Shown: positions 38,952 to 48,111, counted from the first letter of the whole stretch. The stretch is 59,775 nt of DNA, filler included, from Platydemus manokwari (GCA_037951405.1; 5 parts of 5 records of this genome joined end to end with filler, not necessarily neighbours in it); one strand, 5' to 3'. Numbers and translations: made by a program. Notes: generated from the sequence alone by a model not told the origin.

Positions 38952-39048
38952 TGAGAATAATTTTGTGTGGTGATTTTGATTGTGAAAATTTTATAATTCA
39001 TTCGAAATTATTATTCGAAATATCTGAGAAGATCATCACTCCAGGTGA
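38952..39048 (+). pseudogene. Truncated pseudocopy of the acidic micro-protein gene (promoter plus first codons)
   Basis: GAATAATTTT...TTGATTGTGAAAATTTTATAA matches the family promoter. It is followed by ATA TCT GAG AAG ATC ATC ACT, with ATG mutated to ATA at 39020. Confidence 0.6.
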
Positions 39049-39449
39049 TATTTGAAATGTCTTTAGATAATTAAATATATAATAAAATTAGTATATAAAT
39101 TAGTAAAATTTATAATATAATTGAGTTAATTATAATAAATAATAATTTATAAGATGATAGTTATCACTTTAATAAATAACTATTTATAAATTACTTCAGA
39201 TTTTAAATAATTATTTTTATAATAATTATTAAAAAAATATAATTTCAATTCCAACAGCAAATTGTGATAATTATTAGAAAATTATTTATAAAATTAGCCC
39301 ATGAAATCATATTATTATAATCGCAATAATAATTGCAATATTTCTTAGAACAATACCGCAATATCTGGTATTCAAATATGATTGAATTCATCAATTTTTG
39401 TGATGAGTTGTTTAATATGTGTTTATTAGATTGATCAATCACTTTGATT

Positions 39450-39586
39450 TGTCAGCCATTGTGTATGTTATTTTACAAACATTATCTAGACGTCAATTTC
39501 ATTGGGTATTGATATGAATAATTTTATTGCGTGTTTCATTGTGAAAATTATATAAACCGAACAGATTTCATTTGAAATCATTCAAA
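39450..39586 (+). promoter_or_regulatory. Pol II promoter of micro-protein copy 1 (inverted CCAAT, TATA, Inr); equivalents at 41590-41676, 43381-43500 (minus) and 45010-45152
   Basis: ATTGG at 39501, TATATAAA at 39549-39556, TCATTC initiator-like motif at 39578-39583 (about 30 nt downstream of TATA), then CAAAATG start context. Confidence 0.75.
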
Positions 39587-39745
39587 ATGTCTGACGAAAT
39601 CATCACCGAAGTCACCGCTACTGAAGTCTCAGTTGAACAAGTTGCTACTGCTAAAGTAGTTGAAAATGTCGAATTAGTATCAAAGAAAGTCATTGATGGA
39701 ATTGAAACATCAGAAGTTTCTGAAGAGAAAGAAGAATCACAATAA
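39587..39745 (+). CDS. Acidic micro-protein copy 1 (52 aa), unknown function
   Basis: MSDEIITEVTATEVSVEQVATAKVVENVELVSKKVIDGIETSEVSEEKEESQ*. ATG-TAA ORF conserved in four copies, with TATA upstream. Confidence 0.85.
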   Translation: MSDEIITEVTATEVSVEQVATAKVVENVELVSKKVIDGIETSEVSEEKEESQ

Positions 39746-43218: not shown

Positions 43219-43380
43219 TTATTGTGATTTTTCATTCTCTTCGGAAACTTCTTCTGATGTTTCAATTCCATCAGTGACTTTCTTGGAAACTGCTTCAACA
43301 TTTTCAACGACTTTGGCAGCAGCAACTTGTTCAACTGAGACTTCAGTAGCGGTGACTTCGGTGATGATTTCGTCAGACAT
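43219..43380 (-). CDS. Acidic micro-protein copy 3 (53 aa)
   Basis: MSDEIITEVTATEVSVEQVAAAKVVENVEAVSKKVTDGIETSEEVSEENEKSQ*. TATAAA at 43416-43411. Confidence 0.85.
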   Translation of the reverse strand: MSDEIITEVTATEVSVEQVAAAKVVENVEAVSKKVTDGIETSEEVSEENEKSQ

Positions 43381-45152
43381 TTTGAATGAGTTGGAATGAA
43401 ATCGTTTCGATTTATATTATTTTCACAATGAAACACGCAATAAAATTATTCATATCAACATCCAATGAAATTAATGTTTAGATGATGTTTGTAAAATAAC
43501 ATGCGTATTGTTTATCTAATCAAAGCTTTTGATAAATCGAAAAATTTAATTTTTAATTAAACAAAGATAATTATTATAAATTAATATTAAATAATTATGT
43601 CGAATCAACAATCATTTAAACATATATTAAACTAGCAATCACAATATTTGTGTACCAAATTTTAGGGTCTTTTATAAGGCAATGTTGTTATTCTCATTTC
43701 AATTACAATAATATGAACTCATGGACTAATTTTATAAATAATTTTCTAAAAATTATCACTACTTTTTGATGGAATTTAAATTATATTTATATATAATTAT
43801 TATAAATATAATTAATTGAAATCTGAAGTTATTTATAAATTATCATTTATTATAATTAACTCTGTCACTGATATGTTTTCTATTCTGTTTTAAAATTTTA
43901 TTTTGCTACTTTTGTCCAGGAAGAAAGTGACCGAATATTCGAAATTCATGTTAACAATATTCTGGTGAAGATATTGAGTTGATCAAGTGTAAATCATCCA
44001 ATCAAATTTCATTTAAATTTATTTTTGAATATAAACAATATTTTTAACAAGAAATGAAACTATTTATTTAATATTTATCAATTTATCTTTTTTGCTGATC
44101 TTTTTCTAAATCAATTAAAATAATAAGTAAATAATTGTGCCAAACCAACAATAATTTTGTACAAGTTCGTTTAGACTCATCGACTATCCTACAAGGCCAT
44201 CTATTAGTCAAGTTAACACTGTACAGATTGAAACAGGAATACTTTTGTCATTTAGTGAAGAGATGTTAATCAAAACTGTAACACCCGCACATCTTGTCAG
44301 ATTCTTCAAAATAAATGGTACAGTTACAAATGTACCACCGGAATGTTCTGCTTCAGTGAAAAAAGTCAGAGAATTTTAAAAATCTTTAAAAAGTACATAT
44401 TAGCCGTCGGCAAATGAGAAACAATGTGATCAGAAGCCGTTACTACATCTGTTTAAATCCCCAATGTAATGGTCAAGATATTTGTATCATATATAATCTA
44501 CAGGTAATATGTACCAAAGATTTTTCTGTCTGAACGTGATACTGAATTTGAAAATATTACAATAGAAGAGAGATATTGATTACTAATGATAACTACACTT
44601 AGCAATTCGACATATTGGTTGAACTGCTTAATGGCACAGAAGTTTACCCTAAAGAGATATGGATATATCATCTTGCTTGTTCGCTTAAAGAATTATAGAG
44701 CAGTCTTGCACTGGTTGTACGCGATTCTATCATATGTATCCCTGACATAGCAATATTCAAGTATATGTGGAATACATGGAGGAAGACAATTACGTCTCGG
44801 TAGTGGAGAAATGAAGACAGGTCCTTCAATTTGCTAATCTCAATATATTGACATAAATGAAAAAGGGTTATGACAATAATAATTAGAACAACCATTCCAG
44901 AATACGAAAGTGGGTGACAAATCTTGTTCATTTTTATTTCAGGTGTATCTCTTATATGATTTATTTTGTGGTTAAATTTTAAAAGTTAAATTCAAAGTTA
45001 AATTTTACTTTGATTAGTCAGCTGTTGTGCATGTTATTTTACAAACATCATCTAAACATTGATTTCATTGGATGTTGATATGAATAATTTTATGTTGTGC
45101 TTGATTGTGAAAATTATATAAACCGAAAATCTTTCATTTGATATTATTCAAA

Positions 45153-45314
45153 ATGTCTGACGAAATTATCACCGAAGTCACCGCAACTGAAGTCTCAGTT
45201 GAACAAGTTGCTGCTGCTAAAGTCGTTGAAAATGTCGAAGCAGTTTCCAAGAAAGTTACTGATGGAACTGAGACATCAGAAGAAGTCTCCGAAGAGAAAG
45301 AAGAATCACAATAA
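45153..45314 (+). CDS. Acidic micro-protein copy 4 (53 aa)
   Basis: MSDEIITEVTATEVSVEQVAAAKVVENVEAVSKKVTDGTETSEEVSEEKEESQ*. TATATAAA at about 45115-45122. Confidence 0.85.
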   Translation: MSDEIITEVTATEVSVEQVAAAKVVENVEAVSKKVTDGTETSEEVSEEKEESQ

Positions 45315-48111
45315 ATATTTTGATAAATATAATTTTAAAAATCTCATTTGTTGTGCTTTATATAATTAGAATATACAATTGTGACAAAATACGAAGCATA
45401 TTAATGAGCAAAAAACGAAACATATTTTCATTTCATTGTCTGCCTGATAAGACATTTTTTAAGGAGAGAAAGAATTAAGATAATTTAAAATGACAGACTT
45501 TATTGATTTTCAAAGAAATAAAAAATTACCGTAATTAATGAAATATTTTTATAAATTTAATGAATCCGAATTATCTTTTAAAATATTGGTACGTTGGTAT
45601 TAATGTTAAAAACTTTCATGATTATGAAATATTGATACAATGGTCTCCATGTTAAAGAAGTTTAATGATTATTAAAACAGAAAGATTCACAGTTTGGGAA
45701 ACATCCGTAAGATCTCAAAAAACTTAATGAAAAAGTTATTGCAATACATTCAATAAATTTGTAATTTTATTTTAGCAGAAAAACAAAATAATCGCCAAAT
45801 GCAAAATTAACAGCATCACTCTCTTACCATTACCAGCTGTTTGCATTATTACATTATTTTCTTATGTCTGACTGGATCTGATAATTTATTAATTGCGATA
45901 ATTAATGCCTAGCAATTTGTTTATTTTAATGGGTGATTTTTTTGTAAGAGAATTTTTAATATATTTTATTTATTAATGAATTTTATTCGTGTATGCTGGA
46001 TTCTTCAGATATGCGAATTATTAATTTGGATTAATTCATAAATTTATTTATTTGTATTTACTTTCTTTCCATTATATTCCAAGAGTTGTACAAACATAAA
46101 TAAGTTGATAATATGTCATTTACTAAACACACTCCATTTACATCAAACACAAGAATAATTGTCAAATTGTTGTTTTTAATAAGCACTTCAAATTATTTAT
46201 AGTCCTCAAGTCCCAACATATGTGAATAAAGGTTTAGGTAGCAATATGCGATTTTACAATATTTCTCACCTACTTCAGCAAGGCAAGTTGATGATCTAAG
46301 TGGCAATGATCTTACAATAAAATTACTGCTCATTCATCTTCTCACTTCACATATACTCGAACTTCATATGGAATATAATCGAATTATTTGGTGTTAACTT
46401 CTCAATGCTCTTCTACTGGTTTCATAGTTTTCAAATGAGCTTCTGGTTTCTAACATTGTGGCATGACAACTGGTATTAATAGCCTATTTATACTCTTCTA
46501 AATCGTATCATTCTATTCATTGTCTATGATAATTCTAAAAGATTTCCAGTTACCATTGGGGTTATGTTCTTGTTAAATTCACTCAATTTTGTTACTTTGA
46601 TTTTTTTAAAGATTGTTTAAATTGAATATGAGAAGGTTTTCATTTATAATGTGGGTTAGTGTAAACTGTTAGTAATTAATTTATTTCTGATAAATTACAT
46701 ATAAATAAAATGAAGCTTGATTAATTGATATCTGTGTCCTTTTTACCTTCAATAAAATATAATTAATATTATTCACCTTAATATTTAAATAAATTTTTAT
46801 ACATTCTTAAGATTTTCGTAATTATTATTTGATTTTGTTTGGGTTTGAATTTCAGAAGGCTATTTAGCTCGCAGTGTTTTTACCTTATTTATGCCTGACT
46901 CTAAAGGCGCAGTAAAAATGTGATAAAAATAATTTAAATACAAATAAATAAACTCAATAGATGTTACTATAAATAACTAATCGATCCAAATCAAATTACA
47001 ATAAGTTGAACACAAATATGATTTACAATATCAAACATTAACAATGAATAACAATAATTAATTCTGTTAAAGATTGTCGAGGTGGTTTTATAGTAATTAT
47101 AAATTCAAACTACAGATGTACAATTTGTAAAAAGCTGTGACTAATACTATAATAATTATCAGAAGAATTTTAATAACAATAACTATATTCACTCAATAAT
47201 CTTCAACTTATCTGGACTCCAAGCAGATAAGAGGTTGTTGTCTCTTAATCGCTCGTTTATAATAAAAAATAATATTTAAGTATATAGAATGATAAAATAC
47301 AATATAGTGAACAAATTCAAAAATAGAACAAAATAAAATGTATTAATCAACAATTAATAATCTGAATACAATCAATTTGAAATACTAAAGGCGGTGTTGT
47401 TTGAGAAATAACTGTTAGTCAACAAAACAGTAAAGGGCGTAACGCTTAGTTGCTCGGGTAAGCCTCTCGTGACAAAACTGAAGGTGGGGAACTTTTAAGT
47501 AGAGCTTATGATATTTAAACAGACCACAAAGCTAAGACTAGCCGTGGGTCGAGTTTTAATAAAACAGTAAACAAATTTATTTGTAAGATGCATAATAAAA
47601 TTCTTCAAAATTGTAGGAACAAAATTGGCATACAATTAGATAGTAGCTTCGGAACTGAATTTCGTCAAAATTTTCATACAATTTATGGCTGTGATTAGTC
47701 GAAGTGCGAAGTGCCATGTTTTTCTGACAGTATTTATACCATTTTGTGTCTTATTGTGAGTCATGCATCTTGTTGCTATTTTTGGTATAATTATATGCTT
47801 AGTAGCATATGTCACTAATTTTAGCATATGTTCAGCATATATTACTATTTTTAGTTTTAGTGTCTATTTTTAGTAACTAGTGTTGTTATTTCTGTTTTAG
47901 TTATACTGTTAGTTCTATTTTTAGATTCCAATGCGATTTTTCCTAATGACCTTAGTGTCGATTAGTTTTGGTGCAGTGAAACAAATTTTAAATTGTTTAG
48001 CATTTTTTTTANNNNNNNNNNNNNNNNNNNNNNNNNNNNNNNNNNNNNNNNNNNNTTAATTAATTAANNNNNNNNNNNNNNNNNNNNNNNNNNNNNNNNN
48101 NNNNNNNNNNN

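What the first reader, a model, noticed from the sequence alone, without database searches (positions are those of the whole stretch)
38952..45362. Hidden multigene cluster of intronless 50-53-aa acidic micro-proteins (MSDEIITEV...SQ)
Seen in the sequence: four intact ATG-TAA ORFs below the 60-aa ORF cut-off (39587+, 41677+, 43380-, 45153+) plus decayed copies. Copies 3 and 4 differ by 7 synonymous and 3 non-synonymous changes (counted by hand). Length differences between copies are whole codons, and start and stop positions are fixed. Copy 4 has 13 E, 2 D and 4 K in 53 aa. The family has no aromatic residues, Cys, Pro or His and no signal peptide. Inference: an expressed, selected family of disordered intracellular polyanionic peptides. 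The composition recalls prothymosin/thymosin-alpha1 (Ac-SD start) or hydrophilin-type stress proteins, but I recognise no homologue. This is the best candidate for an undescribed system in the window.
Basis: partly seen in the sequence, partly recalled or inferred. Interest (0 to 1): 0.85.

Follow-up and report, generated by a model that had tools for sequence, protein, structure and literature searches.

The report
Orphan acidic micro-protein gene cluster
Four intact 50-53-codon genes, each with its own promoter, sit among decayed copies in AT-rich eukaryotic DNA; they encode a very acidic peptide kept by selection that matches no described family, and whether it is expressed and what it does remain untested.

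Summary
Four intact ATG-to-TAA ORFs lie exactly where stated: 39587+, 41677+, 43380- and 45153+ (52, 50, 53 and 53 aa). One full-length pseudogene and two truncated copies lie among them.

Coding selection is supported. Copies 3 and 4 differ by 7 synonymous and 3 non-synonymous changes. A codon model gives omega of about 0.34-0.4, and omega = 1 is rejected (p = 6e-5 or 5e-4). Indels are whole codons.

Each copy looks like a self-contained Pol II mini-gene. ATTGG lies at -86 to -88, TGAMTAATT at -72 to -74, a TATA box at -36 to -40 and ATTCA at -7 or -8. AATAAA or a one-base variant follows 14-25 nt after the stop.

Contigs of the only public run holding this DNA pile up about 20-50 times deeper on the gene units than on their flanks. 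The family therefore has many more copies in that genome.

An exhaustive HMM search of 1.84 billion proteins found one relative, a 49-aa ORF on a 501-bp metagenome contig with the same promoter layout. Pfam, PDB, the ESM Atlas, other sequence collections and the literature gave nothing.

The product has pI 4.05 and net charge -10.5 to -11.5, and is predicted to be disordered or weakly helical. Prothymosin, thymosin, LEA and hydrophilin membership all fail.

No RNA data exist, so expression and function are unproven. The source organism is unidentified.

The parts
39501..39762 (+). Copy c1, a complete mini-gene. ATTGG 39501-39505, TGAATAATT 39515-39523, TATATAA 39549-39555, ATTCA 39580-39584, CDS 39587-39745 (52 aa), AATAAA 39757-39762.
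41590..41857 (+). Copy c2, the divergent subfamily (54-60% aa identity to c1, c3 and c4). ATTGG at -87, TGACTAATT at -72, TATATAA at -39, ATTCA at -7, CDS 41677-41829 (50 aa), AATAAT 25 nt after the stop.
43202..43466 (-). Copy c3, inverted. Promoter 43381-43466 (ATTGG at -86, TGAATAATT at -72, TATAAAT at -36, ATTCA at -7), CDS 43380-43219 (53 aa), AATAAA 14 nt after the stop.
   Evidence: (I1, I2)
45067..45331 (+). Copy c4. Promoter 45067-45152 (ATTGG at -86, TGAATAATT at -72, TATATAA at -38, ATTCA at -7), CDS 45153-45314 (53 aa), AATATA 14 nt after the stop.
42450..42638 (+). Full-length pseudogene of the c2-like type. It stays in frame but has two internal stop codons, lacks the ATG and the MSDEIITEV N-terminus, has a longer middle part, and still ends in ...ESQ-TAA.
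38935..39060 (+). Truncated 5' copy: promoter remnant (ATTTGG, TGAGAATAATT, degenerate TATA) plus the first 30 nt or so of the CDS, with ATG changed to ATA.
40287..40484 (+). Orphaned 3'-flank fragment, 74% identical to the 3' flank of the pseudogene (42637-42825) and similar to that of c2. The CDS belonging to it is gone.
   Evidence: (D6)
39130..40037 (+). Duplication unit around c1 (about 0.9 kb). It is 73% identical over 985 nt to the inverted unit around c3 (42938-43893), so the cluster grew by local segmental duplication and inversion.

Best explanation
This is a local cluster of real protein-coding mini-genes from a larger multi-copy, lineage-restricted family in an AT-rich (25% GC) eukaryote. 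It holds four intact copies, one pseudogene and two fragments, and it grew by duplication and inversion of units of about 0.9 kb.

Shown:
- Each intact copy is a self-contained unit. An inverted CCAAT box (ATTGG) lies at about -87, TGAMTAATT at about -73, a TATA box at about -38 and ATTCA at -7, with no space for more than a very short leader.
- A 50-53-codon ORF follows, and AATAAA or a one-base variant lies 14-25 nt after the stop.
- The ORF is under purifying selection. It is strongest on residues 1-28, where MSDEIITEV and VVEN are invariant, and weaker on the acidic C-terminal half.

Predicted: the product is a peptide of about 5.6 kDa (mass estimated from length, not computed) with pI about 4 and net charge -10.5 to -11.5. 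It has no signal peptide, Cys, Pro, His or aromatic residue. The first 15 residues are predicted as coil and the rest as a low-confidence helix.

Inferred, not shown:
- The gene number and the canonical strong promoter point to an abundant soluble intracellular polyanion.
- The initiator Met would be removed and Ser2 acetylated.
- The conserved N-terminal module would dock on a specific partner. The variable acidic tail would supply charge, either competing for or chaperoning basic partners such as histones, ribosomal proteins or nucleic-acid-binding proteins, or keeping the complex soluble.
- This would work like prothymosin-alpha or other acidic disordered chaperones without being related to them.

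I put the 'real selected gene family' part at about 0.8 and the specific mode of action at about 0.2.
For: - ORFs and their coordinates.
- Alignments with an invariant N-terminus, invariant start and stop, and whole-codon indels.
- Pairwise dN/dS 0.11-0.59, with third-position excess (for example 1/1/8 differences by codon position for c3 against c4).
- Codon-model omega 0.34; omega = 1 rejected with 2dlnL = 16.0, p = 6e-5 (F1X4), or 12.1, p = 5e-4 (F3X4 grid).
- pN of 0.13-0.16 in codons 1-28 against 0.27-0.31 in codons 29-53.
- Positionally conserved promoter motifs and poly(A) signals in all five copies, including the metagenomic one.
- GC1 0.58-0.66 against GC3 0.23-0.28, a coding-type periodicity.
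- Many further paralogues in the run. Summed contig depth is 220-685 on the gene units against about 10-60 on the flanks, and 3-13 contigs carry each listed alternative base. Of nine well-supported differences inside the CDSs, four are third-position synonymous changes and five hit sites that already vary. The only listed CDS indel is 3 nt: mapped by hand.
- An independent relative, P0001, with the same ends and promoter.
- Charge and pI.
- AF2 mean pLDDT 57, coil 1-15, helix 16-51.
Against: - There is no expression evidence. No RNA run holds this DNA, so transcription, translation and abundance are inferred from sequence alone.
- Only five sequences of about 50 codons support the selection test. 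Gene conversion among copies could distort it.
- TATA to ATG is only about 38 nt. That implies a leader of a few nucleotides, which is unusual for many eukaryotes and unverified.
- The high copy number and the decayed copies would also fit a selfish repeat.
- The function rests on composition and analogy. No partner, localisation or homologue of known function was found.
Confidence: 0.55

Rival explanations
1. The family is real and coding, but it acts as a bulk stress protectant. It would be a heat-soluble, LEA- or hydrophilin-like shield made in large amounts during desiccation, cold or osmotic stress, acting non-specifically as a molecular shield or cation buffer rather than through a specific partner.
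For: The peptide is highly charged, predicted to be disordered or helical and lacks Cys and aromatic residues. Multi-copy intronless genes with strong TATA promoters are typical of genes that need fast, massive induction.
Against: - The hydrophilin criteria are not met: Gly is 2-4% and GRAVY -0.5 to +0.04.
- No LEA Pfam hit.
- No full heat-shock elements or STRE in the promoters.
- The absolutely invariant N-terminal nonapeptide, and stronger constraint on residues 1-28, argue for specific recognition rather than bulk physicochemistry.
Confidence: 0.2
2. This is a repeated, non-functional or selfish DNA unit, either a dispersed short repeat or the relic of a processed gene, whose ORF is open by history and composition rather than by selection for a peptide.
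For: - High copy number in the run.
- Decayed and truncated copies in the cluster.
- The antisense frame and the +1 frame are also open across the unit.
- No transcripts are available.
Against: - Omega is significantly below 1 in the sense frame.
- The ATG, the TAA and the promoter and poly(A) orientation are conserved only for the sense ORF. The antisense ORFs start at ATG, GTG or TTG at different places.
- There are no terminal inverted repeats around the unit.
- No transposase or reverse-transcriptase domain occurs anywhere in the piece, and no Pol III-type RNA family.
- The repeated segment coincides with promoter plus ORF plus short 3' flank, that is, with the gene itself.
- The openness of the other frames follows from the lack of Tyr and His codons.
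Confidence: 0.1
3. The ORF is one exon of a larger spliced gene, or the unit is a structured non-coding RNA gene.
For: The ORF is very short. The piece is otherwise devoid of recognisable genes.
Against: - Similarity among distant copies covers the region from about -90 to the TAA stop and then a poly(A) signal. A TATA box lies 38 nt before the ATG in every copy.
- The exhaustive HMM search of proteins of all lengths found no longer protein carrying this segment.
- No Rfam family at E <= 0.1, and the RNA fold z-score is only -1.9.
- The substitution pattern has codon periodicity.
Confidence: 0.05

Closest known systems
Prothymosin-alpha / parathymosin (thymosin-alpha1 N-terminus); Pfam PF03247
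   Same: Small, very acidic and predicted disordered. No aromatic residue or Cys. The N-terminus MSD... is expected to become Ac-Ser. No signal peptide. It is a plausible functional analogue as a polyanionic binder of basic proteins.
   Different: No sequence relationship: no Pfam hit at E <= 1 and no hit in the profile search of 1.84 billion proteins. It is half the size, only about 28% D+E with 19% Val, and has no C-terminal basic NLS. It is encoded by many intronless clustered copies. Prothymosin is known from vertebrates (own knowledge).
Hydrophilins and LEA-type stress proteins (e.g. yeast Sip18/Stf2, group 3 LEA, nematode anhydrin)
   Same: Small, charged, Cys-free and probably heat-soluble. 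Predicted coil with helical propensity. Gene amplification.
   Different: It fails the defining hydrophilin criteria of Gly > 6% and hydrophilicity index > 1 (criteria from own knowledge of Garay-Arroyo et al. 2000; values). There are no LEA Pfam hits and no 11-mer repeats. It is strongly net-negative, whereas LEA proteins are usually near-neutral or basic.
Beta-thymosins (WH2 actin-sequestering peptides of about 44 aa); Pfam PF01290
   Same: Similar length. The MSD start and the ...ES(Q) C-terminus are superficially alike. Intracellular and without a signal peptide.
   Different: No LKKTET/WH2 motif, no Pfam hit, and far more acidic.
Acidic ribosomal stalk proteins P1/P2 (hinge and acidic tail); Pfam PF00428
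   Same: An Ala/Val-rich stretch followed by an EEKEES-like acidic run.
   Different: No N-terminal dimerisation domain, no terminal GFGLFD motif, no Pfam hit. The resemblance is compositional only.
Taxonomically restricted, tandemly amplified small-ORF (microprotein) families of eukaryotes
   Same: An orphan family of fewer than 60 codons, missed by standard annotation cut-offs. Local duplication and inversion with birth and death of copies. Purifying selection.
   Different: This is a category, not a homology group. This particular family has no described member.

Membership tests
Prothymosin/parathymosin (PF03247) | Significant match to the family profile | tested here: not met
   hmmscan of all four peptides against Pfam-A at E <= 1 gave no PF03247 hit. 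The profile search of 1.84 billion proteins returned only one anonymous 49-aa ORF.
Prothymosin/parathymosin (PF03247) | Long central poly-D/E tract (about 50% acidic) and a C-terminal basic nuclear localisation signal | tested here: not met
   D+E is 14-15 of 49-53 residues (28-31%). No basic cluster lies near the C-terminus, which ends ...EESQ.
Beta-thymosin / WH2 (PF01290) | LKKTET-type actin-binding motif and profile match | tested here: not met
   The motif is absent from the alignment, and there is no Pfam hit.
Hydrophilins | Gly content > 6% and hydrophilicity index > 1 | tested here: not met
   Gly is 1 of 50-53 residues (2 of 49 in P0001), read from the alignment. GRAVY is -0.24 to -0.49, and +0.04 in P0001.
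LEA families (PF02987 and others) | Profile match or 11-mer amphipathic repeats | tested here: not met
   No Pfam hit. The hydrophobic moment at 100 degrees over residues 3-36 is only 0.17-0.25, and no internal repeat was noted by eye in the alignment (no repeat search was run).
Ribosomal stalk P1/P2 (PF00428) | Profile match and C-terminal GFGLFD | tested here: not met
   No Pfam hit. The C-terminus is ESQ.
Transposable element or dispersed repeat (MITE, SINE, or passenger of an autonomous element) | Terminal inverted or direct repeats, Pol III boxes, or a neighbouring transposase or RT | tested here: not met
   - There are no convincing inverted repeats at the unit ends.
- No transposase or RT domain occurs in any ORF of the piece.
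- No Rfam or tRNA-like hit.
- Dispersal across the genome could not be tested, because only this piece is available.
Protein-coding gene under selection (generic) | Omega below 1, conserved start and stop, in-frame indels | tested here: met
   Omega is 0.34-0.4 and omega = 1 is rejected at p = 6e-5 or 5e-4. The ATG and TAA are invariant and indels are whole codons.
Expressed gene | Transcripts, ribosome footprints or peptides | not testable with these tools
   The only public run holding the DNA is not on record as RNA.

The most novel reading that the evidence does not exclude
An undescribed family of abundant polyanionic micro-proteins (Ac-SDEIITEV...ESQ) is encoded by tens of near-leaderless mini-genes. 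It would act as a non-homologous functional counterpart of prothymosin-alpha: a disordered acidic chaperone or competitor for histones or other basic proteins, in a lineage where no such factor is known. It has gone unnoticed because every copy lies below the usual annotation length cut-off.
Probability: 0.15. Interest if true: 0.7.

Novelty: new variant of a known kind. Interest (0 to 1): 0.45.

Why it matters
If these genes are expressed, they form a selected, multi-copy protein family that standard gene calling misses entirely, since every copy is under 60 codons. It has essentially no relatives among about 15 billion predicted proteins. It would add a case to the growing catalogue of functional microproteins.

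The peptide would also be a compact model for disordered-protein recognition: about 50 residues, extreme charge and one invariant nine-residue N-terminal motif. The strictly conserved mini-promoter, with CCAAT, TATA and ATTCA all within 90 bp and an apparent leader of only a few nucleotides, is a ready-made system for studying core-promoter architecture and translation of near-leaderless mRNAs in that organism.

If the genes are not expressed, the finding is only an ordinary lineage-specific repeat.

Tried and rejected
- Pfam scan of the four peptides gave only sub-threshold compositional hits (TMP_N E = 0.015-0.022, COMMD9_HN, TetR_C_46; all far below gathering scores). I treat these as noise.
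- The word-index protein search found nothing with c4 alone. With the five-sequence profile it found only P0001.
- ESM Atlas feature search: best score 0.80 and recognition 1357, in the noise range.
- PDB profile search: only an E of about 9 to an alanine dehydrogenase segment, which is chance.
- The search for related loci in JGI metagenomes, GTDB genomes and IMG/VR, plus an exact DNA pattern scan of the metagenomes, found no relatives.
- Literature searches for peptide substrings and for descriptive terms found nothing relevant.
- No Rfam family or tRNA in the piece. The RNA fold of the c4 transcript region is unremarkable, z = -1.9.
- Pfam on 25 other stop-to-stop ORFs of the piece, to find neighbouring genes, transposon remnants or a clue to the organism, gave nothing above threshold.
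- An IQ-TREE free-omega run with F3X4 did not optimise. Its likelihood was lower than with omega fixed, so I replaced it with a grid over omega and kappa.
- I ran no fold search, because the AF2 model has pLDDT 57 and its matches would be meaningless.
- I ran no complex prediction, because I claim no specific binding pair.
- The source organism could not be identified. The promoter layout (short TATA-to-ATG distance, ATTCA just before the ATG) recalls protists with very short leaders. However, 11.6 kb with no other gene argues for a larger, gene-poor genome, so I leave this open.
- Nothing outside 36383-48011 was used, and no N stretch was filled.

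
Full report
**Scope.** I used only window positions 36383-48011. The piece is 25% G+C and has no long ORF on either strand. It has no tRNA and no Rfam family. None of the 25 other stop-to-stop ORFs I scanned gave a Pfam domain above threshold. It therefore reads as gene-poor eukaryotic DNA. 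I could not identify the organism.

**1.
- One search lists ATG-to-TAA ORFs at 39587-39745 (+, 52 aa; c1), 41677-41829 (+, 50 aa; c2), 43380-43219 (-, 53 aa; c3) and 45153-45314 (+, 53 aa; c4).
- The protein alignment has 28 invariant columns. These include the whole N-terminal nonapeptide MSDEIITEV, VVEN at 24-27 and the terminal SQ.
- c1, c3 and c4 are 92-94% identical to one another. c2 is 60% identical to c4.
- Length differences are gaps of one and three codons.
Its composition statement is also correct.
- Three decayed copies are present:
  - an in-frame pseudogene at 42450-42638 with two stops and no start or N-terminus;
  - a 5' fragment at about 38935-39060 with ATG changed to ATA;
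  - an orphaned 3' flank at 40287-40484.
- There are no further copies elsewhere in the piece.

**2. Anatomy of a unit.** The DNA alignments and a positional motif scan show the same layout in all four copies:

| Element | Position relative to the ATG or stop |
|---|---|
| ATTGG (CCAAT box on the other strand) | -86 to -88 |
| TGA(A/C)TAATT | -72 to -74 |
| TATA box | -36 to -40 |
| ATTCA | -7 or -8 |
| ATG in an AAA/AAC context | 0 |
| TAA stop | end of ORF |
| AATAAA, or a one-base variant | 14-25 nt after the stop |

- With a TATA box only about 38 nt before the ATG, the mRNA leader would be a few nucleotides long. This is an inference with no 5'-end data behind it.
- Everything needed for a Pol II mini-gene of about 250 nt is contiguous, which fits 'intronless'.
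- The units are embedded in larger duplicated blocks. The c1 block 39130-40037 is 73% identical over 985 nt to the inverted c3 block 42938-43893. c3 and c4 share 84% over 441 nt.
- The cluster therefore grew by local segmental duplication and inversion, with gain and loss of copies.
- No inverted terminal repeats bound the unit.

**3. Is it coding?**
- Pairwise Nei-Gojobori dN/dS is 0.11-0.27 among c1, c3 and c4, and 0.24-0.59 for the distant pairs.
- Differences fall mostly on third positions among the close pairs, for example 1/1/8 by codon position for c3 against c4.
- A Goldman-Yang codon model on the five sequences gives omega = 0.34. Omega = 1 is rejected with 2dlnL = 16.0, p = 6e-5 (F1X4). 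A grid under F3X4 gives an optimum near 0.4 and 2dlnL = 12.1, p = 5e-4.
- Constraint is uneven. pN is 0.13-0.16 in codons 1-28 and 0.27-0.31 in codons 29-53.
- GC1 is 0.58-0.66 against GC3 of 0.23-0.28.
- In simulation, random substitutions at the divergence of c2 or the metagenomic copy leave the frame open only 13-14% of the time.
- The antisense frame and the +1 frame are also open. The antisense frame shares third positions with the sense frame and stays open because the peptide lacks Tyr and His codons. Its start codons are not conserved (ATG, GTG or TTG at different places), and the promoter and poly(A) signals point the sense way.
- An RNA-structure reading is not favoured (z = -1.9; no Rfam hit).

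**4. The family is larger than this cluster.**
- Only one public run holds this DNA. It is not on record as RNA and is held as contigs.
- I laid its contigs on 39420-45400 at 80% likeness or better. Single contigs have depth about 5-12, and flanking bins sum to about 10-60. The four gene units sum to 220-685, and 3-13 different contigs carry each listed alternative base.
- This is not a copy number. It does mean at least a dozen distinct paralogues, and probably tens.
- The elevated segment coincides with promoter plus ORF plus short 3' flank.
- I mapped the nine best-supported differences that fall inside the CDSs by hand. Four are synonymous third-position changes: 45167, 45272, 45287 and 43243. 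Five are replacements at sites that already vary among the window copies, at codons 15, 17, 30, 30 and 38.
- The only listed CDS indel is a 3-nt insertion, after 39711, that restores the Glu codon missing in c1.
- None of the listed changes alters the first 14 residues.

**5. Relatives elsewhere.**
- An exhaustive profile search of 1.84 billion representative proteins of all lengths found one hit (E = 2e-8). This is P0001, 49 aa, with the same MSDEIITEV start and ESQ end.
- P0001 lies on a 501-bp ENA metagenome contig, ERZ27257134.
- That contig shows the same ATTGG, TGACTAATT, TATA, ATTCA and AATAAA layout.
- Its 5' flank is 64-76% identical to the window copies. In the codon tree it groups with c2.
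- It therefore comes from the same or a closely related organism, and it may be a paralogue rather than an orthologue.
- Every other search was blank:
  - Pfam;
  - the word-index search of 5.8 billion clusters;
  - exact look-up in the protein collection, where none of the four window peptides is on record and P0001 is the only member of its cluster;
  - the ESM Atlas;
  - the PDB;
  - JGI metagenomes, GTDB genomes and IMG/VR;
  - full-text literature.

**6. The product.**
- pI is 4.05 and net charge -10.5 to -11.5, or -14.5 in P0001. There are 14-15 acidic residues against 1-4 basic ones, and 7-11 Val. GRAVY is -0.5 to +0.04.
- There is no signal peptide, Cys, Pro, His or aromatic residue.
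- AlphaFold2 on the five-sequence alignment gives mean pLDDT 57 and pTM 0.15. Residues 1-15 are coil, and the first ten residues have the highest confidence (about 75). A low-confidence helix spans 16-51.
- This is the profile of an intrinsically disordered or conditionally helical peptide.
- By the usual N-terminal processing rules (own knowledge), Met1 would be removed and Ser2 acetylated.

**7. Most likely mode of action (inference).**
- Many copies with a canonical strong promoter suggest high output.
- An invariant N-terminal module with a freely varying but always acidic tail suggests specific docking plus an electrostatic effector or solubilising tail.
- The nearest functional analogy is prothymosin-alpha and other acidic disordered chaperones of basic proteins. 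I give this about 0.2.
- A bulk stress-protectant role is the main alternative, also about 0.2. Against it stand the failed hydrophilin criteria, the absence of LEA hits, the absence of full heat-shock elements or STRE in the promoters, and the sequence-specific conservation.
- A selfish or non-functional repeat gets about 0.1. An exon or non-coding RNA reading gets about 0.05.

**8. Comparison with known families.**
- Membership of the prothymosin, beta-thymosin, LEA, hydrophilin and ribosomal stalk families was tested and is not met in any case.
- The resemblances are compositional.
- The family is best filed as a previously undescribed, taxonomically restricted micro-protein family. That category is well known, but this family has no described member.

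**9. Verdict.**
- Expression, function and organism remain open. The proposed kinship with prothymosin or hydrophilins is not supported.
- Interest is moderate at 0.45. The family is real, selected and apparently undescribed, but orphan tandem families are common and nothing yet points to a new mechanism.

Noticed in passing
window 40780-41020: A short stretch between c1 and c2 is extremely repeated in the only run holding this DNA. Summed contig depth is about 5800 against about 12 for single-copy sequence, and up to 88 contigs carry an alternative base. It is probably a dispersed short repeat such as a MITE. No clear terminal inverted repeats were found.
   Followed up: partly
window 44083-44931: A single-copy stretch (depth about 12-43) is richer in G+C (0.27-0.33) than its surroundings and holds several 45-105-codon open frames on both strands. 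None matches Pfam. It could be an exon or exons of an unrecognised gene, or an old degraded insertion, lying between c3 and c4.
   Followed up: partly
window 39571-39792 (-), 41667-41867 (-), 43190-43396 (+), 45137-45334 (-); and +1 frames 41645-41902, 43206-43445 (-), 45142-45366: Across every copy, the antisense frame that shares third codon positions and the +1 sense frame are also open for 66-86 codons. The +1 frame encodes a very basic K/L/P-rich peptide. Both are explained by the Tyr/His-free, GAA/GTT-rich coding sequence. They have no conserved start codons, so I take them as by-products.
   Followed up: yes
L001 1-501 (ENA ERZ27257134, contig k141_1352644): This is the only relative found anywhere: a 49-aa ORF at 284-433 with the same promoter layout. 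A further TATATAAAA lies at about -115 and a TTCTAGAA palindrome at -50. The kind of sample it comes from is unknown to me, and it might reveal the host organism.
   Followed up: partly
window 36383-36459; 42857-42898; 42992-43040; 45581-45676: A (TAA)26 microsatellite lies at the piece's left edge. Imperfect TAA/TTA runs lie 3' of the pseudogene. A 46-nt tandem repeat (2.1 copies) lies downstream of c4. These are ordinary low-complexity features of this AT-rich genome.
   Followed up: no
window 38694-38788 and 41230-41324: A 95-nt direct repeat (77% identity) lies about 350-450 nt upstream of the 5' fragment and of c2. It shows that the duplicated blocks reach well beyond the genes and differ between subfamilies.
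   Followed up: no
window 41758-41815 and 39745/42655 (contigs of run X1): One contig skips 56 nt inside a c2-like CDS, which would be a frameshifted paralogue or a misassembly. Another joins a c1-type stop codon to a c2/pseudogene-type 3' flank. This hints at recombinant or gene-converted paralogues elsewhere in the genome.
   Followed up: no
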